The notes: generated by a model from the letters alone, not told the origin. A stretch of 64,000 bases of DNA from IMGVR_UViG_3300036770_007495:124001-188000; one strand, 5' to 3'. Numbered from the stretch's first letter, positions 1-62,812 are shown. Numbers and translations are program-made.

Positions 1-216
1 CATCATTGTGCCTTGAGAATGAGCACGATGTTGTTTGCCATTGCATACAAATGTTACAATGGCACCATCATCTTTGATGTCTGTTGCATGCAACACATTG
101 TGTCCATCATTGCCTGTATCAGCTTTGGCATCAAAAGCGCCAATGTTGTGAACTTCAATGCGCACTGTTGGTGGTATTGCGTGTTTTTCAAAAAAGAACT
201 GCTTGAATGTTTGCAC
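1..216 (-). CDS. Retropepsin-like/RimK-associated 'ATP-dependent zinc protease' family protein (partial, runs off the window edge)
   Basis: Not in the ORF track. Hand translation from GTG 216: MQTFKQFFFEKHAIPPTVRIEVHNIGAFDAKADTGNDGHNVLHATDIK; AK(A)DTG...LHA matches the family motif AKxDTG...LHA. TAAATA lies 5 nt upstream. Confidence 0.7.
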   Translation of the reverse strand, partial: MQTFKQFFFEKHAIPPTVRIEVHNIGAFDAKADTGNDGHNVLHATDIKDDGAIVTFVCNGKQHRAHSQGTMM

Positions 217-224
217 GCAGTTAT

Positions 225-1280
225 TTATTTTGCAAATTTGATTTTGTATCCACTAGAATCGTAGCATGCAGAGAAAGTTACATCACATGCTCGCAACTCT
301 TTGAACAATCTGATGCAGCTCCATGCATCATACTCTATGCATGCATTGTTGATGATGAATGCTGTACCAAATGGTGCTGTCTTTTTGCCTGGATGCTTAA
401 ACAATACAAACCAGTCATCTTTTTTGCTGCAAATGTATTCAAGAAGTTGAGCTGCTCCTAAAAAATGCATTGCATCTTCTTTGCATTTGATCAAATTCTC
501 GCAGCAAGCAGCACGAGCCATGCAACCAATGCTGTAAGGCAGCATTGAAAAATCATATGGCACTTCATAAATCTTTGATATTTCAGCAAACTGAAATTCA
601 AACTGCATGGCACTAACTACAGGGCGATCTTTTGCAAACTGATTGATGAATTTTTCAATGTTTGCACGATTGCCAATCCATTTGCTTGATTCTCCAATGC
701 GACCGCCATCGCCTTTCAACTCAATGAGGTTGTTGTTGATCATGATGTCGCCTTTGTCAGCTTTGTATCCACCAGCAAGCAACAACAAAGGCAACTCTGC
801 AGGACCAGAATAGCCACGAGTCTTGCCTTCATCAGAAATGGGACGCATTTTTGTCCACACTTCAGCAGTCAATGCACTTGCTTTAAAATCTGCTTTGTAA
901 TATTCACCCAAGAAATCAACAATGTTGGTTCTTTTGAATGCATTTTCTTGCAGATGCTTCAAGAATAATGGAGCAATTGCATCAGTTGATATCGTTTCCA
1001 ACATCTGCAACACACATTCATTGGATACATCACACAAGTAACCAAACAATTTGTTGAGTTCAGTCAATCTATCAATGACTCTGTTGGCAGCAATGAGCTT
1101 GTTGCTTCTTTTGATTAGATTGTCATTGATAACTTTGAAGCATTTGCCAATTTGTGCATGCTGCTTTTGCAGATCAATGTAATGAACAATTATTTCATCC
1201 CACAAACACCCATCAATAACGTATTCCTTTGCATCATCTGTTGCATCATTTGTTGCTACAACGTTGATCATGCAAATCAA
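225..1280 (-). CDS. Hypothetical protein with probable PD-(D/E)XK nuclease-like C-terminal domain
   Basis: 351-aa ORF; segment GPAE...KGDIMINNNLIELKGDGGR resembles an E...GD...ExK restriction-fold active site. Confidence 0.45.
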   Translation of the reverse strand: MICMINVVATNDATDDAKEYVIDGCLWDEIIVHYIDLQKQHAQIGKCFKVINDNLIKRSNKLIAANRVIDRLTELNKLFGYLCDVSNECVLQMLETISTDAIAPLFLKHLQENAFKRTNIVDFLGEYYKADFKASALTAEVWTKMRPISDEGKTRGYSGPAELPLLLLAGGYKADKGDIMINNNLIELKGDGGRIGESSKWIGNRANIEKFINQFAKDRPVVSAMQFEFQFAEISKIYEVPYDFSMLPYSIGCMARAACCENLIKCKEDAMHFLGAAQLLEYICSKKDDWFVLFKHPGKKTAPFGTAFIINNACIEYDAWSCIRLFKELRACDVTFSACYDSSGYKIKFAK

Positions 1281-1687
1281 GGTGCAGTTGACAAATCCTT
1301 GAGTACCGCACTTACTATCTGCTCAACTTGTGCAGGATCTGAGGTGGACAACTGAGAAATTGCAATGTTGATTTGTTTCTCAACATCAGCTGGAATGCTT
1401 GACCTTACTGCTTGAAGTCTGTCACTATCATTGCCTTCAATTGCACCTGCTGTTTGAGCAACAAGTCTAAGCAATTGAATAATGATGGTTCTGAATGTAT
1501 CATAACCGCTCTGAATTTGCTCAGTTGTTTTGTCTGGCTGTTGTGCCATTGCTGCATCAGGTTGAGCAGGAGCTGCTTGTTGATCTTGTGCTGGCGCTTG
1601 CTGCATAGCTACATCAGCAGCTTCATCTTGCTCCATCAAGTAAGTTGCACGAGCTTCTCTAATTACACTGTCAAATATACTTTGCAT
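1277..1687 (-). CDS. Late hypothetical protein, candidate internal head protein
   Basis: TAAATA 6 nt upstream; N-terminus MQSIFDSVIRE..YLME; Q/A/P-rich linker. Confidence 0.6.
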   Translation of the reverse strand: MQSIFDSVIREARATYLMEQDEAADVAMQQAPAQDQQAAPAQPDAAMAQQPDKTTEQIQSGYDTFRTIIIQLLRLVAQTAGAIEGNDSDRLQAVRSSIPADVEKQINIAISQLSTSDPAQVEQIVSAVLKDLSTAP

Positions 1688-1688
1688 T

Positions 1689-2207
1689 TCAGGTATTTAG
1701 GAGCATGCATTTGGTTTTCAAACAGTTGAAGTAGTTGTTGTTGAGAAAAACCAACTTGTATTTGTCAATGAATCTTGTAGCCTTGTCATAGCTATATTTT
1801 ATCTTGTCACCATTGCTGATTTGCATCAAAAATGATGTGCCTTGATTGTTGCTTATGAGTTTGTTGTAATATTCAATAGGTTTGCTGCTGCAATACCATG
1901 TCAAAGGAAGTTTTTTGGTTGCTTCCATGATGAGTTTGTGAATAAACTCCTTGATTTTACCATTTTCATCATCTGGCACCTGGATGCACTCAGAGCTGTA
2001 ATAGAATACTACTTTGCCTTGTGTTATCCCCATTGCAACATCACAACAATGCTTTATTATGCAATGTGTGAGAACCCTCTTAGCATTAGAATCAAACCGT
2101 TTTATATGATACTGTTGCACCAAATCATTGTATTCAATGAGAATGCATTGCAATAGCTCGCAAAAGTTGCAGATGGTTACATTGTAAAGAGGAAAAGAGT
2201 GCAACAT
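1689..2207 (-). CDS. Hypothetical protein
   Basis: 172-aa ORF tightly packed between its neighbours (1-nt gaps). Confidence 0.65.
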   Translation of the reverse strand: MLHSFPLYNVTICNFCELLQCILIEYNDLVQQYHIKRFDSNAKRVLTHCIIKHCCDVAMGITQGKVVFYYSSECIQVPDDENGKIKEFIHKLIMEATKKLPLTWYCSSKPIEYYNKLISNNQGTSFLMQISNGDKIKYSYDKATRFIDKYKLVFLNNNYFNCLKTKCMLLNT

Positions 2208-4823: not shown

Positions 4824-5306
4824 ATGTCTGTCAACGGAAAAAAACCAACAACAAAATTTAGCAAAGAGCAATTTTATGTAGATCCAGATGTGCTCAAACA
4901 ACAAATTACTGAGTTTTACCAAACAGAAGTTTGTACTACAGCACTTGGTGAAAGCATCAACAAAATTGCTCAGGGGCTAAGTTTCTCACCCAGCTTCATC
5001 AATTACACTTATCGTGATGAAATGATTGGTGATGCCATTGTAAAAATGTATAGTGCACTCAAGCACAAAAAGTACAATGTAAACACAGAAACAAATCCCT
5101 TCTCATACTTTACCACCATTGCATTCCATGCTTTCATCAATCGCATCAAGAAAGAAAAAAAGCATCATGAAGCTGTTGAGCAGTATCGTGCAAATGAATA
5201 CGAGAAGCTTCTGACTGCTGGAGAAATACATGACGAAAAATATCACATCTACACCAAACCCAACTGCGATGATTCAGACGACCAGCAAGATAGCGATCTT
5301 CAGTGA
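4824..5306 (+). CDS. 55: Late-transcription sigma factor gp55
   Basis: FINYTYRDEMIGDA and NPFSYFTTIAFHAFINRIKKEKK motifs; directly upstream of gp47/gp46. Confidence 0.93.
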   Translation: MSVNGKKPTTKFSKEQFYVDPDVLKQQITEFYQTEVCTTALGESINKIAQGLSFSPSFINYTYRDEMIGDAIVKMYSALKHKKYNVNTETNPFSYFTTIAFHAFINRIKKEKKHHEAVEQYRANEYEKLLTAGEIHDEKYHIYTKPNCDDSDDQQDSDLQ

Positions 5307-9385: not shown

Positions 9386-11935
9386 ATGATCGGCTATCGC
9401 AATGCAGTTTATCTGCCTCAAGAAGAATGCGTGAGAGTGTTCACATGGGATGAACATGGCAACAGAACTAAGTTTGATGCACATTACAGTCCGTATGTAA
9501 TGATTGAAGATCCTAACGGCAAAGAAGTTAGCATTTTCAATACCAAGTTGCGCACACGCAAGTTCAAAACTCAATACGATCGCAACAAGTTCATCAAAGA
9601 ATGTGGTACTCGTCGATTGTTTGAAAATCTCAATCCGGTGCAGCAATTCTTGGTTGATGCATATTGGAAGCATAATGCAGAAGCAGACTTTGGTAAATTT
9701 GCTGTGCGTGTCATCACCATTGACATTGAGGTGTATTCACCTTCAGAGTTTCCAACCGCAGAGCATGCTCGTCATCCCATCAACATCATTACGTTTCATG
9801 ACTCTCTTACCAACAGATTCTATTCATGGGGCACTAAAGAATATCATCATAATCGTGATGATTTAACTTATGTGTATTGCAAGACAGAGCGACAGCTGCT
9901 GCTTGACTTTATGGAGTTTTTTGGTACGCTTGAAGTGGATCTTCTCACAGGCTGGAACAGCGCAGGATTCGATATTCCGTACATCATCAATCGCATTGGT
10001 AATGTTCTTGGTGATGAATACTACCAGCAATTGTCTCCTGTGAAGCGTGTTTACAACAGAACACTCAATTCGGGTTTGTTTGGCAAGCAGCAAATTCGCT
10101 GGTACATTGATGGCATCTCTTGCGTAGATTACATTGACATCTACAAGCGCTTTAGTTTTGCCAACAGAGAAAGCTACAAGCTTGACTACATTGCAGAACT
10201 TGAATTGGGCGAGAAGAAGGTGGATTATGGTAATACAAATCTTGCAAGCTTAGCCAATGATGATTGGCAATTGTTTGTAGATTACAACTTGCAAGACGTT
10301 GCGTTGCTTGTGAAGATGGATCAGAAGCTGCAATACATTGAGTTGTTGAGAATGCTTGCATACATGGGTCTTACTACCATGGAAAATGCCATGAGCACCC
10401 TGTCAACCATCTCCGGAACTGCAGCCATCCGAGCCAGACAAAAAGGTCAGTTTTTGCCAACGTTTTTGCGTGGTGAAGATGATGGCAAGAATCCTGGTGC
10501 ATTTGTTGCAGAACCATTGGAAGGATTCCAGACTAGTGTTGTATCATTTGATGCAAACTCTCTGTATCCCAACATCATGATTAGTCTCAACATGTCACCT
10601 GAAACCAAGGTGGGTAAAATCATTGAGAGTGGCGATGAAGGTGTAGTGATTCAACACATCAATGGATCCACTTACAACTTATCACTTGCTAAATTTGCCA
10701 AGTTTGTCAAAGATGAGCAGATTGCCATTTCCAAAGCAAAGGTGTTGTTCAGTCAAAAGAACAAAGGCATCTTGCCTGAAATTGTGGATGAATACTACAA
10801 AGAGCGTGTTGCTGTTCGCAAAGAGATGATGAATCTTAAAAAGAGTGGCAACAAAAGCAAAGATGTACAAGACAAGATCACACAGCTCAATGCCAAGCAA
10901 TTGTGCATCAAGATTTTCATCAATAGCGTATATGGATACATGGGCAACAAAAATGCTCCATTGGGTGATGATGACATTGCTTCATCCATTACTCTGACTG
11001 GTCAGTTTGTAAACAAGTCGTCCAGATCATTGGCACGTGAGTATGTTGCAAGCATTGTAGGCAACAATGACTTTGAAGACATTGCTGTTGCTGGTGATAC
11101 TGACTCTGTCTACTTGTCCATTGCACCTTTGCTGAGACATCACAATGTGCCACTTGCAACTAATGGCAAGGTGACACCCAAGGTGTATGACATCATTGAT
11201 GGTCTCAACAATTACATCAATGAAAAGATCAACGAGAGAATGATCAATGAACTCAATTCAAAAGATCCTCGCATTTTCTTCAAACGAGAATCCATCATTG
11301 ATAAAGCATTGTTCTTGCAGAAAAAGCGGTATGTAGCTCACGTCATTGATGATGAAGGCATTGAGTGTGCCAAGTGGAAGTATGTGGGCGTTGAAGTGGT
11401 ACGAACTGCCATGCCCAAGGCTATCAAGCCCTATGTCAAGAAAATCATTGAGACAATGATTACTTCGCAGAATCGTGCTGATACCAACAAGGTATTGAAT
11501 GAAGCATATGAAGTACTCAAGACTCTCAAGCCAGAAGAAATTGCATATGTCATGGGTGTCAAAGATTATGACAAGTATGCATCTCAATGCAAAGAGTTTA
11601 CAACTGTCAAAGGTATGCCTGTGCATGTTAAATCTGCATATTACTACAACACTCTGCTCAACAAGTTGGAACTGTCGAGCAAATATGAAAAGCTGCAATC
11701 CGGAGACAAATTGAGATGGATGTATCTCAAGACACCCAACAAGTATGGGATGAAGACCATTGCATTCAAGTACTACTATCCAGAAGAATTTCACGCATTG
11801 TTTCAGATTGACTATGAAACAATGTTTGAGAAAATTGTATTCAGTGTTGTGGAGAGATTCTTTGCATGTGTCAAATGGCCTGCGCACAAGCCAAATGAGC
11901 AAATGAGCGCAGATTTATTTGATTTATTTGGTTGA
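9386..11935 (+). CDS. 43: Family B DNA polymerase gp43
   Basis: Exonuclease motifs DIE, GWNS.GFD.PY, YN.QD; polymerase motifs SFDANSLYP, K..INS.YG, GDTDS, KKRY. Confidence 0.97.
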   Translation: MIGYRNAVYLPQEECVRVFTWDEHGNRTKFDAHYSPYVMIEDPNGKEVSIFNTKLRTRKFKTQYDRNKFIKECGTRRLFENLNPVQQFLVDAYWKHNAEADFGKFAVRVITIDIEVYSPSEFPTAEHARHPINIITFHDSLTNRFYSWGTKEYHHNRDDLTYVYCKTERQLLLDFMEFFGTLEVDLLTGWNSAGFDIPYIINRIGNVLGDEYYQQLSPVKRVYNRTLNSGLFGKQQIRWYIDGISCVDYIDIYKRFSFANRESYKLDYIAELELGEKKVDYGNTNLASLANDDWQLFVDYNLQDVALLVKMDQKLQYIELLRMLAYMGLTTMENAMSTLSTISGTAAIRARQKGQFLPTFLRGEDDGKNPGAFVAEPLEGFQTSVVSFDANSLYPNIMISLNMSPETKVGKIIESGDEGVVIQHINGSTYNLSLAKFAKFVKDEQIAISKAKVLFSQKNKGILPEIVDEYYKERVAVRKEMMNLKKSGNKSKDVQDKITQLNAKQLCIKIFINSVYGYMGNKNAPLGDDDIASSITLTGQFVNKSSRSLAREYVASIVGNNDFEDIAVAGDTDSVYLSIAPLLRHHNVPLATNGKVTPKVYDIIDGLNNYINEKINERMINELNSKDPRIFFKRESIIDKALFLQKKRYVAHVIDDEGIECAKWKYVGVEVVRTAMPKAIKPYVKKIIETMITSQNRADTNKVLNEAYEVLKTLKPEEIAYVMGVKDYDKYASQCKEFTTVKGMPVHVKSAYYYNTLLNKLELSSKYEKLQSGDKLRWMYLKTPNKYGMKTIAFKYYYPEEFHALFQIDYETMFEKIVFSVVERFFACVKWPAHKPNEQMSADLFDLFG

Positions 11936-11959
11936 AAAACCAACAACAGAGGGTAAATT
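11932..11959 (+). promoter_or_regulatory. Sigma70-like promoter; -35 box contains the gp43 TGA stop
   Basis: TTGAAA-N16-TAAATT, 5 nt before ATG 11965. Confidence 0.55.
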
Positions 11960-11964
11960 ACTGC

Positions 11965-12315
11965 ATGAGTCAAAATCTTATCGCAATCAAGAGTCAAGGT
12001 GAAACAGTCATTGGTGAGCTCATCGAGCGCACCGAAACCAGTGTAAAGGTCAAGAATCCAGCAAGCTTGTATATTCAGCCAACGCAGAATGGTCAGCTTA
12101 CTGTGCAGTTGTTCCCAGTATTTTTTGGTGAGTTGCTTGATGCTGTAAAGCGCAGCGAAGGCACCGTCTGGACATACAATGTTGCAGGTGCAGGTGTTGG
12201 TGAAGACATTGCTTTTGATGAAAAGCTTGTTGCTCAATACACCAAGATTTTCAATCCTAGCCCCATCATCACCCCAGAAGGATCTGGCAAGGTTGTGAAG
12301 CTTTTCGATGATTGA
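11965..12315 (+). CDS. Small beta-rich hypothetical protein
   Basis: ATG 11965 follows the promoter; GETVIGEL...VKNPA pattern is typical of small SH3/Sm-like T4-type proteins. Confidence 0.7.
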   Translation: MSQNLIAIKSQGETVIGELIERTETSVKVKNPASLYIQPTQNGQLTVQLFPVFFGELLDAVKRSEGTVWTYNVAGAGVGEDIAFDEKLVAQYTKIFNPSPIITPEGSGKVVKLFDD

Positions 12316-15518: not shown

Positions 15519-15549
15519 GTTTTTATTTATTTATCTCACAACATAATTG

Positions 15550-41802: not shown

Positions 41803-41810
41803 ATGAATAT

Positions 41811-46718: not shown

Positions 46719-46733
46719 ATGTGTATTTATGCG

Positions 46734-50353: not shown

Positions 50354-50396
50354 CACAGTTATTTAAACGCATGGCGCAGAAATGTAAATCATTTTA

Positions 50397-53800: not shown

Positions 53801-54607
53801 TCAGTCAAAGATTGATTTGCCAGGAGTGAGCTTGCTGTTGACTTTCATGCTGCCTTTGCTCATGAGAGTCTTGCCCTTGTCACCAAGTGCCTTTGGTTCT
53901 GCTTCAAGATCAACGTTAACAGAGGCATCAGCCTTGCCGCCAGTCTTGCCTGTTACAGTACCGCCCACTTTCATCTTGCCCTTGCCCATGAGATCATGGC
54001 CTTTGTTGCCAATTGGCTTTGGAGAAGGCTCAACTACAACGCTTTCTGGAAATGCTCCTTCATCTTCGTCTTCATCATCCATCATCTCATCACCGAGATC
54101 AGCGCCAAGATCTTCTGCGCCCAATTCTTCATCGGTCATTTCATCTTCCATGCCGCCTTCAAGCTGGCCCATGAGTGCATCATGAAGCTTCTGTGCAAGT
54201 TCACGTGGAAGAGAAATTGTGATTTCTGTTTCATCACCCATGTCATCAGAAACATCAACATCAAGAGCTTCAAGGTCTTGGTTTTCAGTATCCATGTCAG
54301 ATGGGTTGTCCATCACTTCTTCGTAGAGAGTATCAAAAAGAGATTTTTGTGTCATACCGGTATTTAGGGCCACTGCCTGTGCTTTTTCAACTCCTAAAGA
54401 AAATTTTTGAGGCTCAAACAAATTATTTTTCTTGCCCTTCTTGGAGTCCAGTGCTGGTACAAAGCCTGAAGCATTGGCAGGGCCACCTTTTTTGTCCATG
54501 TCCATGATTTCAGCGCCCATGGTTGGCTTTTTAATTTTCATTGTTGGCAGTGGCTTGCCGCCTTTGCCGCCTTTGAGTTTGATTTTGACTGTAGATTTGC
54601 GTTGCAT
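53801..54607 (-). CDS. Late low-complexity protein (basic N-terminus, acidic core, two C-terminal repeats); possible prohead core/internal protein with an internal isoform from 54355
   Basis: TAAATA 5 nt before ATG 54607 and again 5 nt before in-frame ATG 54355. Confidence 0.75.
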   Translation of the reverse strand: MQRKSTVKIKLKGGKGGKPLPTMKIKKPTMGAEIMDMDKKGGPANASGFVPALDSKKGKKNNLFEPQKFSLGVEKAQAVALNTGMTQKSLFDTLYEEVMDNPSDMDTENQDLEALDVDVSDDMGDETEITISLPRELAQKLHDALMGQLEGGMEDEMTDEELGAEDLGADLGDEMMDDEDEDEGAFPESVVVEPSPKPIGNKGHDLMGKGKMKVGGTVTGKTGGKADASVNVDLEAEPKALGDKGKTLMSKGSMKVNSKLTPGKSIFD

Positions 54608-54612
54608 AGCAT

Positions 54613-54633
54613 TATTTAGGGCTGCAATAAATA
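54613..54633. promoter_or_regulatory. Back-to-back divergent late promoters
   Basis: TATTTA 54613-54618 (-) and TAAATA 54628-54633 (+). Confidence 0.75.
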
Positions 54634-54641
54634 AAAGCACT

Positions 54642-56360
54642 ATGGCAAATAAAAAAGGTGACTATTATCTCAACAATCCTGCGCTGCCTACCAGCAGGGC
54701 AGAGTTTGAGTATACACCAGAAATGTTGAAGGACATCAAAAAATGCGAGCAGAACTTGCTATTTTTTGCTGAAAACTATTTTTACATCATTGATCCAGAT
54801 GAGGGCAGAACCATCATCAAGCTCTACAAGTATCAAAAAGATGCTTTGAGAATGCTGCGAGACAACAGATACAATTTGTTGCTTGCAAGTCGACAAATTG
54901 GTAAAACCACATTGCTGACCATTTATGCACTGTGGATTGCATGTTTCAATGAAGATCAAAACATCATGATTGTGGCTAACAAAGAGAGCACAGCCATTGA
55001 AATCTTCCGAAGAGTGCGTCTAGCATATGAGCAATTGCCCAACTGGCTCAAGCCTGGTGTTGATGAATATGGCAAGACTAGTATGACGCTCAACAATGGT
55101 TCCAGAATTGGTATTTCCACAACAACAGGCAGTGCTGCTCGTGGTACTTCCTTGAATGTATTGATTCTTGATGAGTTGGCTTTCATTGATCCACCTTCCA
55201 TCATGGAAGATTTCTGGCGTTCTGTGTGGCCTACCATTTCTCGCTCTAAAAAATCCAAAGTTCTCATTGCATCCACTCCCAAAGGCACAGACAACTTGTT
55301 TTATCAATTGTATGATGGCTCAGTAAAAGGTGAAAATGGCTTTGCCAGCATGACCATCAAATGGGATGCTGTGCCAGGGCGTGATGAAAAGTGGAAAAAA
55401 GAACAAATCAAGCAAATTGGCAGCGTTGAATCATTCCTCCAAGAATATGAATGTGAATTTTTGCAGAGCGGTGAATCTTCCATTGACGTAGAAACATTTG
55501 AACGCCTCAAGCAAAATTGTTCCATTGCACCCTATTCTTTGGATGATGGCAAGTATATGATTTGGCAGCAGCCCAAAGCAGATAGATTATACATTGTGGG
55601 TGTTGACGTTGCTGAAGGTGTGGGTCAGAACTATTCTGTTGCACAAATTCTCGACATAACTGATTTGACCAACATTGAACAAGTTGCTGTGTATCGAGAC
55701 AATGTAATTGCACCTGCTCAATTCACAACAAAACTGTTTGAGATATTGCAGCAGTGGGGTAATCCATTGGTGCTCATTGAAAGAAACAATTGCGGTGCTC
55801 AAGTTGTTGACAATTTGCGCAACATTCATCAGTATGAGAACATTGTGAGCTATGGTGCTGAACTAGCAGGTCGCAAAAAAGACTTTTTGGGTGTTGTTGC
55901 TCATACCAACACCAAGCAGCGAGGTGTTCTCAACATGAGATATTGGGTGAATGTGCTCAATTGTGTTCGTTTCAATCACATGCAGACCATCATCGAGCTC
56001 AAAGACTTTGTGCGCAAAGCCAATGGCACATGGAGTGCACGAGGCAATGGCACAGATGACTGCGTCATGAGCCTCATTTGGGCACTTGTTGTTTTGGACA
56101 ATGATCCACAGTTTGGCATTTGCAGCCAATATTTTGAAGTTGTTGACTTGGATGAAAACAGCAAACCAAGAAGCATCAAGCCCATGGATTATGGCCTCAA
56201 ATATTTTACAGCCAACAACAAAAAATTTGATATGTTTGGCAACATGCTAGAGGCATCTAAATATGAAGATGCAGCTACTTTGCCAATTCTGTTTGGTTCT
56301 GCTGGTCAACAAAATGAAGATTTAGCTGACTTAGAATTGCAAGGCTGGAAAATTTTATGA
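54642..56360 (+). CDS. 17: Terminase large subunit gp17
   Basis: YL.NP.L, LY.YQ, SRQIGKTT, ANK, LP.WL, LDE.AFI, ASTP.G, QEYEC.F, GVDVAEG, DD.VM. Confidence 0.96.
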   Translation: MANKKGDYYLNNPALPTSRAEFEYTPEMLKDIKKCEQNLLFFAENYFYIIDPDEGRTIIKLYKYQKDALRMLRDNRYNLLLASRQIGKTTLLTIYALWIACFNEDQNIMIVANKESTAIEIFRRVRLAYEQLPNWLKPGVDEYGKTSMTLNNGSRIGISTTTGSAARGTSLNVLILDELAFIDPPSIMEDFWRSVWPTISRSKKSKVLIASTPKGTDNLFYQLYDGSVKGENGFASMTIKWDAVPGRDEKWKKEQIKQIGSVESFLQEYECEFLQSGESSIDVETFERLKQNCSIAPYSLDDGKYMIWQQPKADRLYIVGVDVAEGVGQNYSVAQILDITDLTNIEQVAVYRDNVIAPAQFTTKLFEILQQWGNPLVLIERNNCGAQVVDNLRNIHQYENIVSYGAELAGRKKDFLGVVAHTNTKQRGVLNMRYWVNVLNCVRFNHMQTIIELKDFVRKANGTWSARGNGTDDCVMSLIWALVVLDNDPQFGICSQYFEVVDLDENSKPRSIKPMDYGLKYFTANNKKFDMFGNMLEASKYEDAATLPILFGSAGQQNEDLADLELQGWKIL

Positions 56361-56954: not shown

Positions 56955-56960
56955 TAAATA
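56955..56960 (+). promoter_or_regulatory. T4-type late promoter TAAATA (representative of 24 copies listed in findings)
   Basis: cATAAATA-tctac-ATG of gp18; gp55 is encoded in the window. Confidence 0.85.
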
Positions 56961-56965
56961 TCTAC

Positions 56966-59608
56966 ATGGCATCAAGAATTATCAACTCTCCAGGGGTTCA
57001 AATCAATGAAATCGATGAATCAGCAATTCAGGCAAATGTTTTTGGTACTGATGTATTGATCACTGGTTTCGCAAGCAAAGGCCCAACAGATGAAGTCATC
57101 AGTGTTTCTTCACTTTCTGAATTTGAACAGATTTTCGGCACACCAACCAATGCTGCAGAGCGTTATTTCTACTACTCTGTAAAGCCTCTGTTTGGAACAG
57201 GTGCTAATTTGCTGCTCAGCCGCTTGCCATATGGCGGCGGAAATGGTGATGGCTTTGGTTCACAATACAGCGCAGTAGTTTACCCTGTTGTTGCTGTATC
57301 TGGTAACCCAATTGATTTTAATCTTGCTGATGCTACTGCAACAGCTACAGCAGACATTAATCTTGCAACAGGTGCAGTATCATCTGTAGCAGTAGTACTG
57401 TCTGGTCAATATTATGCTGTTGCTCCAACAATCACAGTATCTGCTCCTCAGACACCTGGTACAACTGCAACATTTACAGCAAACATTACCCTTGCAGGCG
57501 CTGTATCTTCTCTTACTACTACTCAAGCAGGATCTGGATATACTTCTGCACCAACCATAACAATTGCTGCACCAAGCTACAACAACATTGGTGGTATTCT
57601 GCCAACACTTGATAGTGCAAGTGTTGATGCATATGTTCTTGGCAAGCCTCTTCACTTTACTCTTACCAAGGCTCAATATTTGTCATGCATCAATGGTGAA
57701 GCATTTGTGTGGAACAAAACTCCAACAACAGCAGGTGTTGTACAAAACATTGCAAGCATCAGCGATTTCGGCAAAGCTGGCGTTGTAATCTTCAACAAAG
57801 CACAAACAACCATCAATGACAAGTATGAAGGTTATTACATTGGCATGGTTGACAACACCAATGCAAATCCTGCAACTCAGTTTGATGGCATTGTTACAGC
57901 AACAACAGTTAACGTTGCTGCTCCAAACGTTGGCAGCAAGGATACAACAACACCTGTTCCTGCAACTCGCCTCAACTTTGCATTGTCGGGTAGCAATGCA
58001 TCCAATGGCACAATGTCGCAGGCATTTGAAAATGCTGCTTCATTCAACATTGGCACAAATCAATTCAACGATTACCTCACACTTGGAGTTGTGAAGCTTC
58101 GTCAGAGCATCTTCTCACCAGACACAATCAAGCTTGATTATGTTCTTGAAGAGAAGTTTGTTGCAAGCCTTGACTTCTACCGTCAGCGCACACCAGAAAA
58201 TGGTGGTCCAATCACTTCTGCATACATTGGCAATGAAGTTGATAATGGCTCACGCAACATCACCATCATGGTCAACGACTTTGTGTCAAATCGCAATGGC
58301 GCAACCTGGATTGGTCTTGATGGCTTGCCAAGCAAGAGTGTTAGAATGCTCAGCCGCGAGCTTGAAGGCTTGCTTACTGATGCAACAACATTTGCAAGTG
58401 TCTCTGGCACAATCGGCATTACACCTGGTGCATTCAATGCTGCAAAAACATCATTTGCAACTAATCTCAATGGTTATGCTGACGACTTGCTTGCACTTGG
58501 TGCATATGTAAATCCAGCACCTGCTGATAAGACCATTGGTAGCTTGCCAAACAAGATTGATCGCATCCTTCAGTTGGTTGAAAATGATGAATTGTTTGAC
58601 ATTGACATCTCTGTTGAAGCTGGTCTTGGTACCATCTATGCAACAACTTGCGCAGCACGCACAAGTTACTATGATGACACCTTGATGAATTCAACATTGC
58701 AGCAAGCTCTTGGTTACTTGCAGACAACTCTCAATTACACCGCACCATCTGATGATACATTGGACTTGAGAGGCAACTACAACACCATCTTCAGCAAGTT
58801 TGCTGACTTTGCACGTGACAGACTGGATCACATCTTCATTGCTGATCCAATTCGTCACATCTTGGTGCAGGGCAACAATTCCAAGACACTCAATGACAAT
58901 TCCAAGAGCTGGTCACAGCATGTGTTCTCACCATTGCGTCACCAGTTTGAGCTTGCCAACACCAGCTATGCAGCAGCATATGCAAACTGGGCACGAGTCA
59001 ATGATGGCTTCTCTCAGACAAATGTGTGGGTGCCATTCTCTGGCACAGTTGCATCAGACTTTGCTCGTTCCGACAGAGACTTTGCATACTGGGCAGCACC
59101 AGCAGGCTTCCGCCGCGGTTTGGTGAGCGAAGTGGATGACATTGCAATTGCTCCTAACCAGAAGCAGCGCGATGACTTGTACAAGTTCAACCTCAATCCA
59201 ATCACACAGTTTGTGCGCGAAGGCATTGTAATCTTTGGTCAGAAGACTCTCAACCGCATTCCAAGTGCATTTGACCGAGTCAACGTCCGCCGCTTGTTCA
59301 TCTTGCTTGAGAAGCAGACCAAGGCAATTGCTCGCTACTATGTGTTTGAGCCAAACACCTTGTACACTCGCACACGTCTTGTGGATGACTTGACACCAAA
59401 CTTTGAAGCTGCTAAAACAGCAACAATCAATCAGGGCATCTACGACTACATCATTGTTTGCGATGACAGAAACAACCCACCATCTGTCATTGATGCAAAC
59501 GAGCTTGTGGTTGACATTTACATCAAGCCAGTTCGCACTGCAGAGTTCATCTTGGTGAACTTCCATGCAACAAGAACAAGTGCCAACTTCCAAGAAATCT
59601 TGAGATAA
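56966..59608 (+). CDS. 18: Tail sheath protein gp18
   Basis: SPGVQINEID, G.A.KGP, F..IFG.P, WAAPAG..RG, NPI, GQKT, SAFDRVNVRRLF, FEPN, IKP.R.AEFI. Confidence 0.97.
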   Translation: MASRIINSPGVQINEIDESAIQANVFGTDVLITGFASKGPTDEVISVSSLSEFEQIFGTPTNAAERYFYYSVKPLFGTGANLLLSRLPYGGGNGDGFGSQYSAVVYPVVAVSGNPIDFNLADATATATADINLATGAVSSVAVVLSGQYYAVAPTITVSAPQTPGTTATFTANITLAGAVSSLTTTQAGSGYTSAPTITIAAPSYNNIGGILPTLDSASVDAYVLGKPLHFTLTKAQYLSCINGEAFVWNKTPTTAGVVQNIASISDFGKAGVVIFNKAQTTINDKYEGYYIGMVDNTNANPATQFDGIVTATTVNVAAPNVGSKDTTTPVPATRLNFALSGSNASNGTMSQAFENAASFNIGTNQFNDYLTLGVVKLRQSIFSPDTIKLDYVLEEKFVASLDFYRQRTPENGGPITSAYIGNEVDNGSRNITIMVNDFVSNRNGATWIGLDGLPSKSVRMLSRELEGLLTDATTFASVSGTIGITPGAFNAAKTSFATNLNGYADDLLALGAYVNPAPADKTIGSLPNKIDRILQLVENDELFDIDISVEAGLGTIYATTCAARTSYYDDTLMNSTLQQALGYLQTTLNYTAPSDDTLDLRGNYNTIFSKFADFARDRLDHIFIADPIRHILVQGNNSKTLNDNSKSWSQHVFSPLRHQFELANTSYAAAYANWARVNDGFSQTNVWVPFSGTVASDFARSDRDFAYWAAPAGFRRGLVSEVDDIAIAPNQKQRDDLYKFNLNPITQFVREGIVIFGQKTLNRIPSAFDRVNVRRLFILLEKQTKAIARYYVFEPNTLYTRTRLVDDLTPNFEAAKTATINQGIYDYIIVCDDRNNPPSVIDANELVVDIYIKPVRTAEFILVNFHATRTSANFQEILR

Positions 59609-59625: not shown

Positions 59626-59654
59626 GAGTGCAGCGCAAGCTGCACTCTTTTTTT
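59626..59654 (+). terminator. Intrinsic terminator after gp18
   Basis: GAGTGCAGC-GCAA-GCTGCACTC-TTTTTTT. Confidence 0.92.
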
Positions 59655-59675
59655 GTTTAAACCATAAATACTAAC

Positions 59676-60170
59676 ATGAACGAAGACCTAAAAGAGCTGC
59701 AAAACATCTATGAAAGTGCTGTCAATGAAGGCATTTTGAATAGAATTGGTGCCAACATTGCAGGTGCAGTTGGGACTGCAGGTGGTGCACTCAAGGGAGC
59801 ATATTATGGTGCAACAGGCAATGTGCAAGGTGCAGCTGATGCAGCATTAAAAGCAAAAAATGCTAAATTTGATTCATACAAAAAAGCTGCTGATGCAAAG
59901 TTAGAAAAAGTTTTTAACGAAGTGGTGACCGATCTTACAAAGCTCAATTTGGTAGATCAAGCAAGAATGAAGCCATACATTGATGGATTCAAACAAAACC
60001 TTGCAACTTCTTTTACTCAATTTTTGCAGGGATTGACTGCTACAGTTGCACAAGCTCCAGCAGCCCCCACTCAAACCACACAGCAAACTACTCAAACCAT
60101 CCCACCATCTCCACCAGCAAGTACTACTGCTACGCCTCCTGCTGCATCACAGCCGGTTGGTCCTATGTAA
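59676..60170 (+). CDS. Late protein with Gly/Ala-rich segment, candidate internal head protein
   Basis: TAAATA 5 nt upstream; MNEDLKELQNIYESAVNE followed by GILNRIGANIAGAVGTAGG; P/T-rich tail. Confidence 0.75.
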   Translation: MNEDLKELQNIYESAVNEGILNRIGANIAGAVGTAGGALKGAYYGATGNVQGAADAALKAKNAKFDSYKKAADAKLEKVFNEVVTDLTKLNLVDQARMKPYIDGFKQNLATSFTQFLQGLTATVAQAPAAPTQTTQQTTQTIPPSPPASTTATPPAASQPVGPM

Positions 60171-60186: not shown

Positions 60187-60627
60187 ATGGCTCACAAAGA
60201 GTTTAAACAAGGCGTTTACAAGCCCATCAACAGGCAGAAATACATTGGTGATAAACTGCCTTTTTATAGATCAGGTTATGAGCTAAAATTCATGCGATGG
60301 GCTGATGCTAACCCCAATGTTTTGAAGTGGGGAAGTGAAAGCATCATTGTCCCTTACAAGAGCCCCATTGATGGTAAAATGCATCGCTATTTTGTAGATA
60401 ATGTGGTCATCATCAAAGAAGGAGAAAACATCAAAAAATATCTCATTGAGATCAAACCACACAAACAAACACAGCCGCCAACTGCTCATGGCAACAAAAA
60501 ACAGACCACCATTTTGTATGAGCAAGCTACATATGTCATCAATCAAGCCAAATGGGAAGCAGCAAAGAAGTGGTGCAAAGATCATGAATGGGAGTTTCTC
60601 ATCTTAACAGAGAAGCATTTGCCATAA
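60187..60627 (+). CDS. 4: gp4 head completion nuclease (TnsA-like)
   Basis: G.YKP.N..KY.GD, YRS.YE..FM.W.D.NP.V..W.SE, HRYF.D, EIKP..QT, NQAKW.AA, ILTE. Confidence 0.92.
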   Translation: MAHKEFKQGVYKPINRQKYIGDKLPFYRSGYELKFMRWADANPNVLKWGSESIIVPYKSPIDGKMHRYFVDNVVIIKEGENIKKYLIEIKPHKQTQPPTAHGNKKQTTILYEQATYVINQAKWEAAKKWCKDHEWEFLILTEKHLP

Positions 60628-60635
60628 ATACTATG

Positions 60636-61523
60636 ATGCAAGATTTTAAAACATTTTACAGACAGCACTTAATTGAAGAATCATTCAAACAAGATCTTGC
60701 AATGATGGCACTTGCTGTATCACTTGCACTCACAACTGGCATTGGGCTGCATAAAATTGGTTTCATACAAGACAGGGACAGCGTTGAATATGCATTGAGA
60801 AATGCACAAGACATGGGATACAATGTTCAGGAGATTGTACAGCAATCTAAACAGCCAGAGATTCAACAAAAAGCAAAAGAAATTCTGCAACAAAAACAAG
60901 ATGACAAGGCTGAACAGATGTACAAAAAAGCTGTTGAGCCGCCTGCTCAGCCTCTACAACCTTCTGTTTTGAAGCCTGCTAAAGAGACTGAACAAGAATT
61001 TCTCAGAGCAGCCATGGAATACATCAAAGAAAATGAGCTTGGTCAAGCAGGCATAGAATATCATAAACCATACCGAGATCACAAAGGCAAACCCACCATT
61101 GGCATTGGTCATTTGATTACACCCAAAGAGCAAAGCAAGGGCATTTTTAAGAAAGGCATTTCTGAAGATCAGGTTTATGAGTTGTTTACCAAAGATATTC
61201 AAACCAAGCTGCAAACAGCACGCAGAATATTTCCCAAGTATGATGAATTTCCGCTTGATTTGAAAATCAAGTTGTTGGATGGAATTTTCCGTGGTGATGT
61301 ATCAGGATCACCCACCACCATCAAGCTCATCAATGCAGGCAAATGGGAAAAAGCGGCAAATGAGTTTCTTGACAACAAAGAATACAAAGAAGCAGTTAAA
61401 AAAGGATATGGTACTGGGCCACGCATGAAGAAAATTGCAGATGCAATCAAAGCAATGGGTAATAAACAGCAGCCAGAAGCAACAAAACCTAAATTGCAAC
61501 CAGAAACAACGCCGTTTTATTAA
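60636..61523 (+). CDS. GH24-like lysozyme with N-terminal leader and hydrophobic anchor
   Basis: E...PY.D..G.PTIG.GHL, TI.LIN.G.W..AA.EF, GPR; TAAATA 5 nt before ATG 60636. Confidence 0.85.
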   Translation: MQDFKTFYRQHLIEESFKQDLAMMALAVSLALTTGIGLHKIGFIQDRDSVEYALRNAQDMGYNVQEIVQQSKQPEIQQKAKEILQQKQDDKAEQMYKKAVEPPAQPLQPSVLKPAKETEQEFLRAAMEYIKENELGQAGIEYHKPYRDHKGKPTIGIGHLITPKEQSKGIFKKGISEDQVYELFTKDIQTKLQTARRIFPKYDEFPLDLKIKLLDGIFRGDVSGSPTTIKLINAGKWEKAANEFLDNKEYKEAVKKGYGTGPRMKKIADAIKAMGNKQQPEATKPKLQPETTPFY

Positions 61524-61544
61524 CGGTGAACAATAAATACTCAT

Positions 61545-62093
61545 ATGGCACAGACAAATCAAACCATTGGAAACTTTTATGACCGCGCAGTAGCTCGTGA
61601 ATTCTCACGCGACTTCTTGTTTCGAGTTCTGAACATCACTTTTGCAGGCGGTGCTGTCTTCAATGAAGATGAGCTTGTTTATGCAAAAACAGCAAAACTA
61701 CCTGCTCGTCAAATTACCAACGTGCAGAGCAAGTACATGGGTCTCAACTTCAACTTAGCTGGCACAGCTGTATATCCAGGCAGCGACAGCTATGCAATTT
61801 CTTTTTATTGTGATGCCAATTCTTTGCTGAGAAACAAATTTTTGCAGGAATCTCGTCGTGTGTTCGATGATGCAACCAGCACAGGTGATTACAACATTGC
61901 TGGTCGTGCAAGTTCCATCACTTTGTTGCAGCTTGACAAGGCATTGGAACCAGTTTCCACATTCCGTCTTGTGGGTGCCAACATCAAAAACGTGGGTGAA
62001 ATTCAATACAACATGGCAGATGGCACTGGTCAGCCTGTTAATTTTGATGCTACCATCTCTTATCACTTCTTTGAAGAGAACGCACCAGCCTAA
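61545..62093 (+). CDS. 19: Tail tube protein gp19-like
   Basis: R.F.F.V, A.LP.R.I....YMG....AG...Y, L.QLD, VGEI.Y, F..TI.Y..F. Confidence 0.75.
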   Translation: MAQTNQTIGNFYDRAVAREFSRDFLFRVLNITFAGGAVFNEDELVYAKTAKLPARQITNVQSKYMGLNFNLAGTAVYPGSDSYAISFYCDANSLLRNKFLQESRRVFDDATSTGDYNIAGRASSITLLQLDKALEPVSTFRLVGANIKNVGEIQYNMADGTGQPVNFDATISYHFFEENAPA

Positions 62094-62104
62094 TAAATAG
62101 TTAG

Positions 62105-62812
62105 GTGCCACAGTCACCACGAGAAACCTATTTAGCACTCCTAGACAGATGGGAGTATAATCTTGCACTCAATTCTCAGTGGGTGCTCATCATTCACGAT
62201 TTGCCCCGCATTCAAGGCATTGTGAGAAAAGTACAGCCTCTAGAAGCATGGACACCCAACTCAGATTGGAACATCAATGAAGTCATCTACGAAAAACTCA
62301 CCAACGAGCAGGTGCAAACAACAGAAGCCATGGGATGCTTCTTTGTCAACAATGTTGTTGTGCCTGGTGAAGCATACAATCAAGAAGAAGCTACCATTTC
62401 CAACAGTGGTGGTTACATCAATGTGGGTGTAGCAGGCAAGAGAACATCTTTTTCTGGCAAACGAGTAGCAACATCATTCAGAGAAACCAATTTAGACTTT
62501 GTTGAGACAGTGCTGCGCCCATGGGTCATTGCATGTTCACACATTGGCTTCTTTGCTTTTCAGTCAGCTGCAGACAATGTTAAGATTCCTAGAATGCAGC
62601 TCATCAATTTTTCACGCCTCAAGCATACTCCTGTGTCACCTTATGATTCTGAAACATTCAGACCCATCAGAAAAATCTACAACTTCTACAATGTAGCACC
62701 CATTGAGATTGATACCAAGACATACGATTACACTGAAGACCAAGGAACACCGCAAATGAGACAAGTGGGCTGGATTTTTGACAATTACAGCATACAATAC
62801 TCTAGACAATGA
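62105..62812 (+). CDS. Baseplate tail-tube initiator (gp54/gp48-like)
   Basis: Tube-fold pattern V..PG, F.ET, W, Y.FYN..P; GTG start 5 nt after TAAATA. Confidence 0.6.
   Translation: MPQSPRETYLALLDRWEYNLALNSQWVLIIHDLPRIQGIVRKVQPLEAWTPNSDWNINEVIYEKLTNEQVQTTEAMGCFFVNNVVVPGEAYNQEEATISNSGGYINVGVAGKRTSFSGKRVATSFRETNLDFVETVLRPWVIACSHIGFFAFQSAADNVKIPRMQLINFSRLKHTPVSPYDSETFRPIRKIYNFYNVAPIEIDTKTYDYTEDQGTPQMRQVGWIFDNYSIQYSRQ

What the first reader, a model, noticed from the sequence alone, without database searches (positions are those of the whole stretch)
216..62105. Genome-wide leaderless late transcription: TAAATA-N5-start codon
Seen: TAAATA lies exactly 5 nt before 18 start codons: (-)216, 15518, 16629, 26546, 33121, 37440, 41802, 45740, 46718, 50855, 54355, 54607 and (+)19003, 56966, 59676, 60636, 61545, 62105. 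It lies 6-8 nt before 1687, 24787, 26581, 39895, 50353 and 54642. None of these spacers contains a Shine-Dalgarno sequence. Known: T4 gp55 recognises TATAAATA and initiates a few nt downstream of it. Inference: transcription starts at or next to the AUG, so most late genes, including those inside the tail block, have their own leaderless mRNA. T4 instead uses leadered, SD-led late mRNAs. This points to a distinct expression strategy and a host that translates leaderless mRNA well.
Basis: partly seen in the sequence, partly recalled or inferred. Interest (0 to 1): 0.85.

Follow-up and report, generated by a model that had tools for sequence, protein, structure and literature searches.

The report
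Promoter boxes fused to start codons
In this uncultured freshwater T4-like phage, the late-promoter box TAAATA sits exactly five bases before the start codon of most virion genes, so these genes are probably transcribed as messages with no leader; this has not been shown by RNA 5'-end data, and a weaker form of the same layout is present, apparently undescribed, in the cultured Pelagibacter phage HTVC008M.

Summary
TAAATA-N5-ATG occurs 16 times (plus 3 GTG) against 0.84 +/- 0.92 in shuffles. All 18 N5 sites and all six N6-N8 sites check out.

The window is part of a 224.7-kb contig of a very divergent T4-like phage that encodes a gp55 late sigma factor. The box precedes tail, baseplate, fibre, sheath and terminase genes. 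It precedes none of the recognisable replication and recombination genes.

In T4, TATAAATA spans -13 to -6, so a 5-nt spacer puts +1 on the A or G of the start codon. Five further results fit this:
- The base before the start codon is almost never A.
- The base 6 nt after the box is a purine at 25 of 25 sites.
- There is no -35 element.
- Relatives keep the box and its spacing while the spacer letters change.
- Boxes fill 34-nt divergent gaps, and one lies 9 nt after an intrinsic terminator.

Nine other genes carry a sigma70-like TANNNT at the same N5 distance, five of them with a TTGNNN -35. Shine-Dalgarno motifs are nearly absent from the whole window, not only from late genes.

HTVC008M and many marine relatives share the N5 layout for a subset of genes. 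T4 and Melnitz do not.

No direct 5'-end data could be obtained. Verdict: a leaderless organisation is likely (about 0.7), and it is a new variant of known kinds.

The parts
4824..5306 (+). gp55 homologue (late sigma factor), lying between a uvsW-like helicase and gp47/gp46 as in T4-like genomes
   Evidence: phrog_234 late sigma transcription factor, E 1e-25
214..227 (-). TAAATA-N5-GTG; the TAA of the box is the stop codon of the upstream gene 225-1271
1685..1699 (-). TAAATA-N6-ATG (136-aa gene); the 6th base after the box is A
15516..15529 (-). TAAATA-N5-ATG (336-aa gene); a second overlapping box at 15528-15533; kept at N5 in relative L042
16627..16640 (-). TAAATA-N5-ATG of the 118-aa gene 16273-16629 (phrog_858, starvation-inducible transcriptional regulator); N6 in L042
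18992..19005 (+). TAAATA-N5-ATG of a DHH phosphoesterase-like gene; N6, N7 or N5 in relatives
24774..24789 (+). TAAATA-N7-ATG (62-aa gene)
26544..26583 (.). Divergent pair: two back-to-back boxes in a 34-nt gap. Box 26552-26557 (-) lies N5 before the ATG at 26546; box 26569-26574 (+) lies N6 before the ATG at 26581. Both are kept in L042.
33119..33132 (-). TAAATA-N5-ATG (339-aa gene); the TAA of the box is the stop of the upstream gene
37438..37451 (-). TAAATA-N5-ATG of an 858-aa tail-protein-like gene; the TAA of the box is the stop of the upstream gene
39893..39908 (-). TAAATA-N7-ATG of a 533-aa tail-fibre-like gene
41800..41813 (-). TAAATA-N5-GTG (627-aa gene); the TAA of the box is the stop of the upstream gene
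45738..45751 (-). TAAATA-N5-ATG (1309-aa gene)
46716..46729 (-). TAAATA-N5-ATG of a tail collar/fibre-like gene
50351..50365 (-). TAAATA-N6-ATG (990-aa gene); N6 kept in L002, L003, L004 and L008
50853..50866 (-). TAAATA-N5-ATG (152-aa gene); the TAA of the box is the stop of the upstream gene; kept in L002
54353..54366 (-). Internal in-frame TAAATA-N5-ATG (Met85) inside gene 53801-54607. It is kept in six relatives, down to 40% amino-acid identity, with four different spacers.
54605..54644 (.). Divergent pair in a 34-nt gap. Box 54613-54618 (-) lies N5 before the ATG at 54607. Box 54628-54633 (+) lies N8 before the ATG at 54642, which starts the large terminase gene.
56955..56968 (+). TAAATA-N5-ATG of the tail sheath gene. 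The box and N5 are kept in L002-L005, L008, L023 and L024, with spacers tctac, ctagc, caagc and aatgc.
59626..59655 (+). Intrinsic terminator after the sheath gene: a 9-bp G+C-rich stem, a 4-nt loop and T7. It ends 9 nt before the next box.
59665..59678 (+). TAAATA-N5-ATG of a 164-aa gene that is absent from a relative's RNA contig
60625..60638 (+). TAAATA-N5-ATG of a lysozyme-domain (gp5-like) gene; kept at N5 in seven relatives with four spacers
61534..61547 (+). TAAATA-N5-ATG of a tail-tube-like gene; kept at N5 with five different spacers
62094..62107 (+). TAAATA-N5-GTG; the GTG and the N5 spacing are kept in five relatives
63647..63664 (+). TAAATA-N9-ATG of a gene that runs off the window (239 aa in L001); the 6th base after the box is A
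11932..11967 (+). Second class: TTGAAA-N16-TAAATT-N5-ATG, a sigma70-like promoter abutting the start; TAAATT-N5 is kept in L042
13744..13779 (+). Second class: TTGAAC-N16-TACATT-N5-ATG (QueC-like gene); not kept in L042
15550..15587 (+). Second class: TTGAAA-N18-TATTGT-N5-ATG (amidotransferase-like gene); TATATT-N5 in L042 and L044
20781..20794 (+). Second class: TAAACT-N5-ATG of gp32 (ssDNA-binding protein)
22241..22254 (+). Second class: TATAGT-N5-ATG; TATAGT-N5 is kept in L042 with a different spacer
24990..25026 (+). Second class: TTGATA-N17-TACATT-N5-ATG of the primase gene; TATATT-N5 in L042
26962..26996 (+). Second class: TTGCCA-N15-TAAATT-N5-ATG; kept in L042; same 14-mer as at 11954-11967
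27819..27855 (+). Second class: TTGATC-N17-TACATT-N5-ATG; TACAGT-N5 in L042
62798..62811 (+). TACTCT-N5-ATG of the baseplate-hub-like gene; not clearly kept in relatives

Best explanation
TAAATA is the core of this phage's gp55-dependent late promoter. It occupies -11 to -6, has no -35 element, and is fused to the start codon so that RNA polymerase starts on the A (or G) of ATG/GTG. Most virion genes therefore get their own mRNA with no 5' leader, or with a 1-4-nt leader at the N6-N9 sites.

Because almost no terminators separate the genes, these transcripts form nested sets that run on into downstream genes. Genes without a box mostly overlap or abut the stop codon of the gene before them, and are presumably translated by coupling or by SD-independent internal initiation.

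A second set of genes, among them the primase, gp32 and QueC-like genes, uses sigma70-like promoters (TTGNNN, 15-18 nt, TANNNT) fused to the ATG at the same distance. Leaderless organisation is thus a property of the genome rather than of the late class only.

Shown from sequence: the motif, its spacing, its class specificity, its conservation and the presence of gp55. Inferred: the transcription start position and translation from a 5'-terminal start codon.
For: 1. Statistics: 16 ATG plus 3 GTG at N5, against 0.84 +/- 0.92 in shuffles. The word is depleted elsewhere: 15 copies away from starts against about 27 expected for the whole window.

2. A gp55 homologue is encoded at 4824-5306.

3. 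Class specificity: boxes precede sheath, tube-like, baseplate, fibre, lysozyme-domain and terminase genes. None precedes uvsW, gp47, gp46, gp43, uvsX, gp41, gp32, the exonuclease-like gene 23898-24776 (phrog_107) or the primase.

4. Geometry: in T4 the first T of TATAAATA is at -13 (PMC2988020). The last A is then at -6, and a 5-nt spacer puts +1 on the first base of the start codon.

5. Start-site signature: the base at -1 is A in 0 of 18 window sites, 2 of 44 clade sites, 1 of 11 HTVC008M sites and 0 of 67 marine sites, and is usually a pyrimidine. Genes without a box have A at -1 in 13 of 45 cases. At the seven N6-N9 sites the 6th base after the box is a purine every time.

6. No -35 element: information is below 0.4 bit at every position upstream of -12 across 65 sites.

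7. Conservation: orthologous sites in relatives with 40-90% protein identity keep the box and N5 while the spacer letters vary. Boxes that are gained or lost always lie N5-N6 from the start. An internal in-frame box at 54355 is kept in all relatives.

8. Placement: two 34-nt divergent gaps hold nothing but two back-to-back boxes. One box lies 9 nt after an intrinsic terminator.

9. Second class: TANNNT lies at N5 in 9 of 45 other genes, against about 0.6 expected. Five of these have TTGNNN 15-17 nt upstream, and 6-7 of 8 are kept in L042 with changes that preserve TANNNT.

10. Controls: T4 and Melnitz boxes are followed by leaders of about 14-28 nt carrying SD motifs.
Against: No transcript 5' end was mapped. 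The RNA-library contigs that could be laid come from 90-95% relatives. They cross at least two of the predicted start sites (56966, 62105), and they may include DNA.

Because SD motifs are absent genome-wide, the host clearly initiates without SD on internal cistrons. Leaderless starts are therefore not needed to explain translation, and an A/T-rich box at -11 to -6 could also help ribosome loading.

For sigma70-type promoters, N5 is one base shorter than the usual 6-nt gap between the -10 hexamer and the start. Three of the N5 starts are GTG, which is a poor leaderless start in E. coli. gp33 and gp45 were not found in the window.
Confidence: 0.7

Rival explanations
1. TAAATA is mainly a translation signal. 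On this reading it is an A/U-rich, SD-replacing element on long polycistronic late mRNAs, positioned like an SD at -11 to -6 for a host whose ribosomes ignore SD. The real promoters would lie elsewhere.
For: SD-like motifs are at background level in all 68 genes. The box sits where an SD would sit. RNA-library contigs of relatives run across some boxes.
Against: The box is absent from all the recognisable replication and recombination genes, which are just as SD-less. It is identical to the core of the gp55 box, and gp55 is encoded. It fills divergent gaps and follows a terminator, both places where a promoter is required. A is avoided at -1, whereas genes without a box have A at -1 in 13 of 45 cases. 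The second class has full -35/-10 promoters at the same distance. The word is depleted on both strands away from starts.
Confidence: 0.08
2. TAAATA is the late promoter, but the fixed N5 spacing reflects only genome compaction, with the box squeezed between a stop and the next start. Transcripts would start a few bases off the start codon, so the first gene is read only from read-through RNA.
For: In 5 of 18 sites the TAA of the box is the stop codon of the upstream gene, leaving an 8-nt gap. Genes are tightly packed: 98% of the window is covered by called ORFs.
Against: N5 also holds where there is room: gaps of 15-67 nt at 45740, 46718, 56966, 59676 and 61545. It holds at divergent gaps and inside a coding region at 54355. 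Compaction does not predict a single sharp offset, the purine at +1 or the avoidance of A at -1.
Confidence: 0.12
3. Chance or a composition effect in an A+T-rich genome.
For: TAAATA is an A/T-rich word. Degenerate TANNNT-N5-ATG is not enriched when counted over the whole sequence rather than at gene starts (47 against 51 in shuffles).
Against: 16 occurrences against 0.84 +/- 0.92 expected, with a maximum of 5 in 300 shuffles. The sites coincide with gene starts and are conserved in relatives.
Confidence: 0.01

Closest known systems
T4 late promoters (gp55/gp33/gp45; TATAAATA at -13 to -6)
   Same: The core TAAATA is the same. There is no -35 element. A gp55 homologue is encoded. The box precedes virion genes on either strand. 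The first two positions of the 8-mer vary among T4 relatives, as noted for Aeh1 (PMC2988020).
   Different: In T4 the box is followed by a 14-28-nt leader carrying GGAG, GAGG or AGGA. Here the start codon begins where T4 transcripts begin, and there is no SD anywhere. Positions -13 and -12 are not TA: A at -12 in 74% of sites, -13 variable.
Pelagibacter phage HTVC008M and marine relatives placed in Kyanoviridae
   Same: HTVC008M has TAAATA-N5-ATG at 11 annotated starts (DNA end protector, head closure, baseplate tail tube cap, tape measure, tail completion and others), including a divergent pair 26 nt apart. In 80 marine loci the N5 offset scores 90, against 6-37 at the other offsets.
   Different: HTVC008M is mixed: its sheath, tube, portal, protease and capsid genes have leaders with clear SD motifs. 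The window's clade is essentially SD-free, and N5 is the dominant arrangement. The pelagimyophage survey reports that late-promoter prediction was unsuccessful in those genomes (PMC7029224).
Leaderless genes of bacteria and archaea (-10 box a fixed few bases before the start codon, as modelled by GeneMarkS-2; lambda cI from PRM; mycobacterial leaderless mRNAs)
   Same: A -10-type hexamer lies at a fixed short distance from ATG/GTG, with no SD. The second class here (TTGNNN, 15-18 nt, TANNNT, N5, ATG) looks exactly like such host-type promoters. That leaderless mRNAs are common in mycobacteria is reported in PMC4633059 (listed). That ATG or GTG at the 5' end suffices there is my own recollection of that paper, not read here.
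   Different: Here the main promoter class depends on a phage sigma factor rather than on the host's, and the arrangement covers about half of all genes of a phage.
Methylophilales phage Melnitz and cyanophages (NATAAATA late promoters)
   Same: The late box is the same, and the downstream consensus is similar (TAAATAGTA...).
   Different: Melnitz late genes have leaders of about 14-20 nt with AGGA or GGAG. P-SSM4 shows a single N5 case in 86 kb, and C48C1 shows none.

Membership tests
T4-type gp55-dependent late promoter | The phage encodes a gp55 late sigma factor | tested here: met
   Window 4824-5306, phrog_234, E 1e-25
T4-type gp55-dependent late promoter | 8-bp box TATAAATA about one helical turn upstream of the start | tested here: inconclusive
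   Six of the eight positions (TAAATA) are invariant. Position -12 is A in 74% of sites and -13 is variable. Variation at -13/-12 is known in T4 relatives (PMC2988020).
T4-type gp55-dependent late promoter | No conserved -35 element | tested here: met
   Below 0.4 bit at every position from -56 to -13 across 65 sites
T4-type gp55-dependent late promoter | Precedes late (virion) genes, not replication genes | tested here: met
   A few boxes also precede non-structural genes (16629, 19003).
T4-type gp55-dependent late promoter | Co-activator gp33 and sliding clamp gp45 present | tested here: inconclusive
   Neither was recognised among the window's proteins. The window is 64 kb of a 224.7-kb contig.
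T4-type gp55-dependent late promoter | Transcription starts 6 nt after the last A of the box | not testable with these tools
   Only indirect evidence: a purine at that position in 25 of 25 sites and a pyrimidine before it in most. The RNA contigs are equivocal.
Leaderless mRNA | The primary 5' end coincides with the first base of the start codon | not testable with these tools
   The single read-laying run returned only assembled contigs of relatives
Leaderless mRNA | A -10-type box at a fixed short distance before the start codon | tested here: met
   N5 for 18 TAAATA and 9 TANNNT gene starts
Leaderless mRNA | No Shine-Dalgarno sequence; start codon ATG or GTG | tested here: met
   5-nt spacers; 15 ATG, 3 GTG and no TTG
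SD-led T4-style late mRNA | A leader of some 15-30 nt with GGAG, GAGG or AGGA between box and start | tested here: not met
   Window. T4 control.
Sigma70-type promoter (second class) | TTGNNN, 15-18 nt, TANNNT | tested here: met
   Five gene starts match with a 15-17-nt spacer, and 15585 matches with 18 nt. Three of the nine lack a clear -35.
Bacteroidota -7 promoter (TAnnTTTG) | The motif is enriched and positioned before genes | tested here: not met
   71 matches against 61 +/- 8 in shuffles, and not placed at gene starts

The most novel reading that the evidence does not exclude
A whole lineage of large freshwater T4-like phages expresses about half of its genes from mRNAs with no 5' leader. 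It does so by fusing both its gp55 late promoters and its host-sigma promoters to the start codons, and it has dispensed with Shine-Dalgarno sequences altogether. The same fusion is used for a subset of late genes by the abundant marine pelagimyophages. That would make leaderless initiation a widespread, overlooked mode of late gene expression in aquatic T4-like phages.
Probability: 0.5. Interest if true: 0.75.

Novelty: new variant of a known kind. Interest (0 to 1): 0.65.

Why it matters
T4 late transcription is a textbook system, and its mRNAs are leadered and SD-led. A clade in which the same promoter is welded to the start codon would show that the gp55 system can drive leaderless expression. 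It would explain why late-promoter searches failed in pelagimyophage genomes (PMC7029224). It would give gene finders an exact rule for calling starts in these phages. It would also point to hosts whose ribosomes handle 5'-terminal start codons well.

Because HTVC008M is cultured and has both SD-led and N5 late genes in one genome, the idea is directly testable there.

Tried and rejected
- **Close relatives among cultured phages.** Megablast of 10 kb against deposited phages found nothing. By protein, the nearest cultured phages are only about 30-36% identical, so no annotated close relative exists.
- **RNA evidence.** Two run searches found freshwater metatranscriptomes. One contig matches gene 61545-62093 almost end to end (61556-62087). 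Others cross the starts at 56966 and 62105. The libraries may contain DNA, so I judged this equivocal.
- **Bacteroidota promoter motif.** TAnnTTTG is not enriched.
- **Generic sigma70 scan.** It is not enriched region-wide. The signal appears only when tied to gene starts.
- **Reaching the capsid region of the same contig.** A search with the HTVC008M capsid protein returned marine relatives instead. These were still useful as a survey.
- **Host.** The window has no tRNA genes. The nearest cellular homologues of the UDP-galactopyranose mutase gene are Verrucomicrobiales and Opitutales MAGs (44-52% identity against 36-39% for other phyla). This is one gene and only a hint.
- **Literature.** No paper in the library links gp55 late promoters with leaderless mRNA. 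The Syn9 dRNA-seq paper (Doron 2016) is not held, so I could not check whether it reports such starts.
- **The TAA-stop overlap idea** explains only 5 of 18 sites.

Full report
**What the window is.** The window lies inside IMGVR_UViG_3300036770_007495, a 224.7-kb viral contig. Public runs that hold it are freshwater metagenomes.

It encodes a T4-type replication and recombination set:
- uvsW-like helicase at 3342;
- gp55 at 4824, gp47 at 5230, gp46 at 6312, gp43 at 9386;
- uvsX at 12350, gp41 at 17652, gp32 at 20792;
- an exonuclease-like gene (phrog_107) at 23898 and the primase at 25024.

It also encodes T4-type virion genes: large terminase at 54642, sheath at 56966, tube-like genes at 56357 and 61545, a head-closure gene at 60187, a lysozyme-domain gene at 60636, a baseplate hub gene at 62809, and fibre and tail genes between 34864 and 46718.

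Its DNA polymerase and sheath are only about 30-36% identical to those of any deposited phage, and megablast finds nothing. It is a deep, uncultured branch of the T4-like phages.

**The observation.** TAAATA occurs 40 times on both strands. An ATG follows at a spacer of exactly 5 nt 16 times and a GTG 3 times. Every other spacer from 0 to 30 nt scores 0-4. In 300 dinucleotide-preserving shuffles the N5-ATG count is 0.84 +/- 0.92, with a maximum of 5.

With the N6-N8 sites included, 25 of the 40 copies sit next to a start codon. Only 15 lie elsewhere, against about 27 expected for the whole sequence, so the word is avoided where it is not next to a start.

**Which genes carry it.** I used a working list of 68 genes. 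Their starts fall into four groups:
- 23 have TAAATA 5-8 nt before the start;
- 9 have another TANNNT hexamer at exactly N5;
- 21 overlap or lie within 3 nt of the stop of the co-directional gene upstream;
- 15 are otherwise.

The TAAATA genes are the tail, baseplate, fibre, sheath, tube-like, lysozyme-domain and terminase genes, plus a few small or non-structural ones. None of the recognisable replication and recombination genes has the box. In the two late blocks, about three quarters of the genes have their own box.

**Why it reads as a promoter whose start site is the start codon.**

- *Sigma factor.* The phage encodes a gp55 homologue.
- *T4 geometry.* The review of T4 late transcription places the first T of TATAAATA at -13 and notes that there is no -35 element (PMC2988020). 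TAAATA is then -11 to -6, and a 5-nt spacer puts +1 on the first base of the start codon.
- *No -35 element.* Over 65 non-identical N5 sites from the window and its close relatives, no position upstream of -12 carries more than 0.4 bit. Position -12 is A in 74% of sites.
- *Start-site signature.* The bases around the predicted start show the usual pyrimidine(-1)/purine(+1) pattern. A at -1 occurs in 0 of 18 window sites, 2 of 44 sites in close relatives, 1 of 11 in HTVC008M and 0 of 67 in marine loci. Genes without a box have A at -1 in 13 of 45 cases.
- *Longer spacers.* At the seven sites with spacers of 6-9 nt, the 6th base after the box is a purine every time. This is what a fixed start 6 nt after the box predicts. 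It gives leaders of 1-4 nt there.
- *Placement.* Two divergent gene pairs are separated by only 34 nt, and these gaps hold two back-to-back boxes and little else. After the sheath gene there is a clean intrinsic terminator, a 9-bp stem followed by T7. The box of the next gene begins 9 nt after the T-run ends.

**Conservation.** The sheath protein retrieved 33 viral loci and gp32 retrieved 20.

In the close clade (sheath 52-79% identical: L002-L006, L008, L023, L024, L042) the N5 peak is as sharp as in the window. At orthologous starts the box and the 5-nt spacing are kept while the spacer letters differ. For example, at 61545 the spacers are ctcat, ctaac, aaagt, aatgc and atagt. The GTG at 62105 stays GTG in the five relatives compared. 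Genes that lack a box in the window (56357, 60187) have one in relatives, again 5-6 nt from the start.

An in-frame internal TAAATA-N5-ATG at 54355, inside the acidic protein gene 53801-54607, is present in all six relatives down to 40% identity, with four different spacers. Everywhere it is encoded as CTA AAT A... This argues for constraint at the nucleotide level and suggests a second, shorter product.

More distant sheath relatives show spacers of 6, 9 or 28 nt, or a classical SD-led leader.

Among the 45 genes without TAAATA, the pattern TANNNT lies at exactly N5 in nine. About 0.6 is expected per offset, and the other 29 offsets score 0-3.

The nine sites are:
- TAAATT (11965 and 26994, sharing the 14-mer TAAATTACTGCATG);
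- TACATT (13777, 25024, 27853);
- TAAACT (gp32, 20792);
- TATAGT (22252);
- TATTGT (15585);
- TACTCT (62809).

Five of them have TTGNNN 15-17 nt upstream, and 15585 has it at 18 nt. Of the seven matches to the full pattern in the whole window, five are at real gene starts.

In relative L042, six or seven of eight are kept, with changes that preserve TANNNT: TACATT to TATATT, TACATT to TACAGT, TATTGT to TATATT. These look like ordinary host-sigma promoters abutting the start codon. They are hard to reconcile with the idea that the N5 element is a ribosome signal.

**Shine-Dalgarno.** SD-like tetramers are at background level for all genes of the window and its close relatives. Taking the best of the first three candidate starts, the fraction with an SD-like tetramer is 0-15%, against 60% in T4, about 48% in HTVC008M and about 49% in C48C1. 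The absence of an SD in the 5-nt spacers is therefore not informative in itself. It does show that the host initiates without SD.

**Comparison with known phages.**
- In a 50-kb late region of T4, TATAAATA is followed by 14-28 nt containing GGAG, GAGG or AGGA. The box-to-ATG histogram peaks at 27-29 nt.
- Melnitz is similar.
- P-SSM4 has one N5 case in 86 kb, and C48C1 has none.
- HTVC008M is mixed. Its sheath, tube, portal, protease and capsid genes have leaders with strong SDs. Eleven annotated genes start exactly 5 nt after TAAATA, including the divergent DNA-end-protector/head-closure pair whose starts are 26 nt apart.
- In 80 marine loci found with the HTVC008M capsid protein (680 kb), the N5 offset scores 90, against 6-37 at the other offsets.

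The pelagimyophage survey states that late-promoter prediction was unsuccessful in those genomes (PMC7029224). The cyanophage review mentions NATAAATA only as lying in positions consistent with a promoter (PMC2984593). No paper in the library connects gp55 promoters with leaderless mRNA. I could not read the Syn9 dRNA-seq study.

**RNA evidence.** Two freshwater metatranscriptomes hold parts of the sheath-to-baseplate region.
- One 532-nt contig covers 61556-62087, almost exactly gene 61545-62093.
- Another lacks gene 59676-60170 and carries TATAAATA a few bases before the head-closure gene.
- Others cross the starts at 56966 and 62105.

Read-through is expected when genes have no terminators between them, and DNA may be present in these libraries. 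This neither supports nor refutes the model.

**Host.** There are no tRNA genes in the window. The Bacteroidota -7 motif is not enriched. The UDP-galactopyranose mutase gene (31086-32072) has its nearest cellular homologues in Verrucomicrobiales and Opitutales MAGs. That is a single-gene hint and no more.

**Conclusion.** The most likely reading (about 0.7) is that gp55-type late promoters, and a set of host-type promoters, are fused to start codons so that transcripts begin on or within a few bases of the start codon. The remaining genes would be read by coupling on the run-on transcripts.

The box may in addition help SD-independent initiation on longer transcripts; the data do not exclude a dual role.

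It is a new variant of two known things, gp55 late promoters and leaderless genes. It is dominant in this clade, and it is present but apparently undescribed in cultured HTVC008M, where it can be tested.

Noticed in passing
window 53801-54607 (-), internal start at 54355: A lysine-rich then very acidic 268-aa protein, encoded divergently from the large terminase gene, has a conserved internal in-frame TAAATA-N5-ATG at Met85. A shorter 184-aa product is likely, as with the nested products of T4 genes 17, 21 and 26.
   Followed up: partly
window 13777-14511, 15585-16286, 16640-16954: A QueC-like gene, a glutamine amidotransferase-like gene and a gene with the N-terminal domain of dATP/dGTP diphosphohydrolase lie close together. 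Phage DNA base modification (of the 7-deazaguanine type) is likely.
   Followed up: no
window 28116-32072 (also 8133-9353 and 16951-17628): A run of four genes with 4-nt overlaps encodes sugar-modifying enzymes: a group 1 glycosyltransferase, a sulfotransferase-like protein, a DUF3431 plus methyltransferase protein, and UDP-galactopyranose mutase. Two more glycosyltransferases lie elsewhere.
   Followed up: no
window 31086-32072; loci L060-L068: The nearest cellular homologues of the UDP-galactopyranose mutase are all from Verrucomicrobiales or Opitutales MAGs (44-52% identity). The next tier, at 36-39%, is spread over many phyla. These contigs are cellular (mostly 48-60% G+C, one at 33.5%) and have no N5 boxes.
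   Followed up: partly
window 11954-11967 and 26983-26996: The same 14-mer, TAAATTACTGCATG, starts two unrelated small genes. In relative L042 both keep TAAATT-N5-ATG.
   Followed up: partly
window 59676-60170: A 164-aa gene with no family match sits between the terminator of the sheath gene and the head-closure gene, with its own box. It is missing from a relative's RNA-library contig, where a TATAAATA box lies directly before the head-closure gene. It looks like an inserted, independently transcribed gene.
   Followed up: partly
window 50864-51817 (-) and 51781-52575 (+): The two longest ORFs overlap by 37 nt at their 5' ends, and neither has a box. One or both starts are probably miscalled. 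A stray TAAATA on each strand lies inside (51347 and 51366).
   Followed up: no
window 16627-16642: The starts of the divergent genes 16273-16629 (-) and 16640-16954 (+) are only 10 nt apart. The box of the minus-strand gene overlaps the first base of the ATG of the plus-strand gene, which has only a TTGACA 14 nt upstream and no -10. How it is transcribed is unclear.
   Followed up: no
window 2209-2622 (-): A small gene matches GIY-YIG homing endonuclease families.
   Followed up: no
window 53748-53777: A 13-bp perfect hairpin flanked by A-runs and T-runs lies between convergent genes. It is a bidirectional terminator.
   Followed up: no
L039 (HTVC008M 50001-100000): HTVC008M carries ribosomal protein bS21 (record 91228-91431). 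It mixes SD-led late genes with late genes whose box is 5 nt from the start. No bS21 gene was seen in the window.
   Followed up: no
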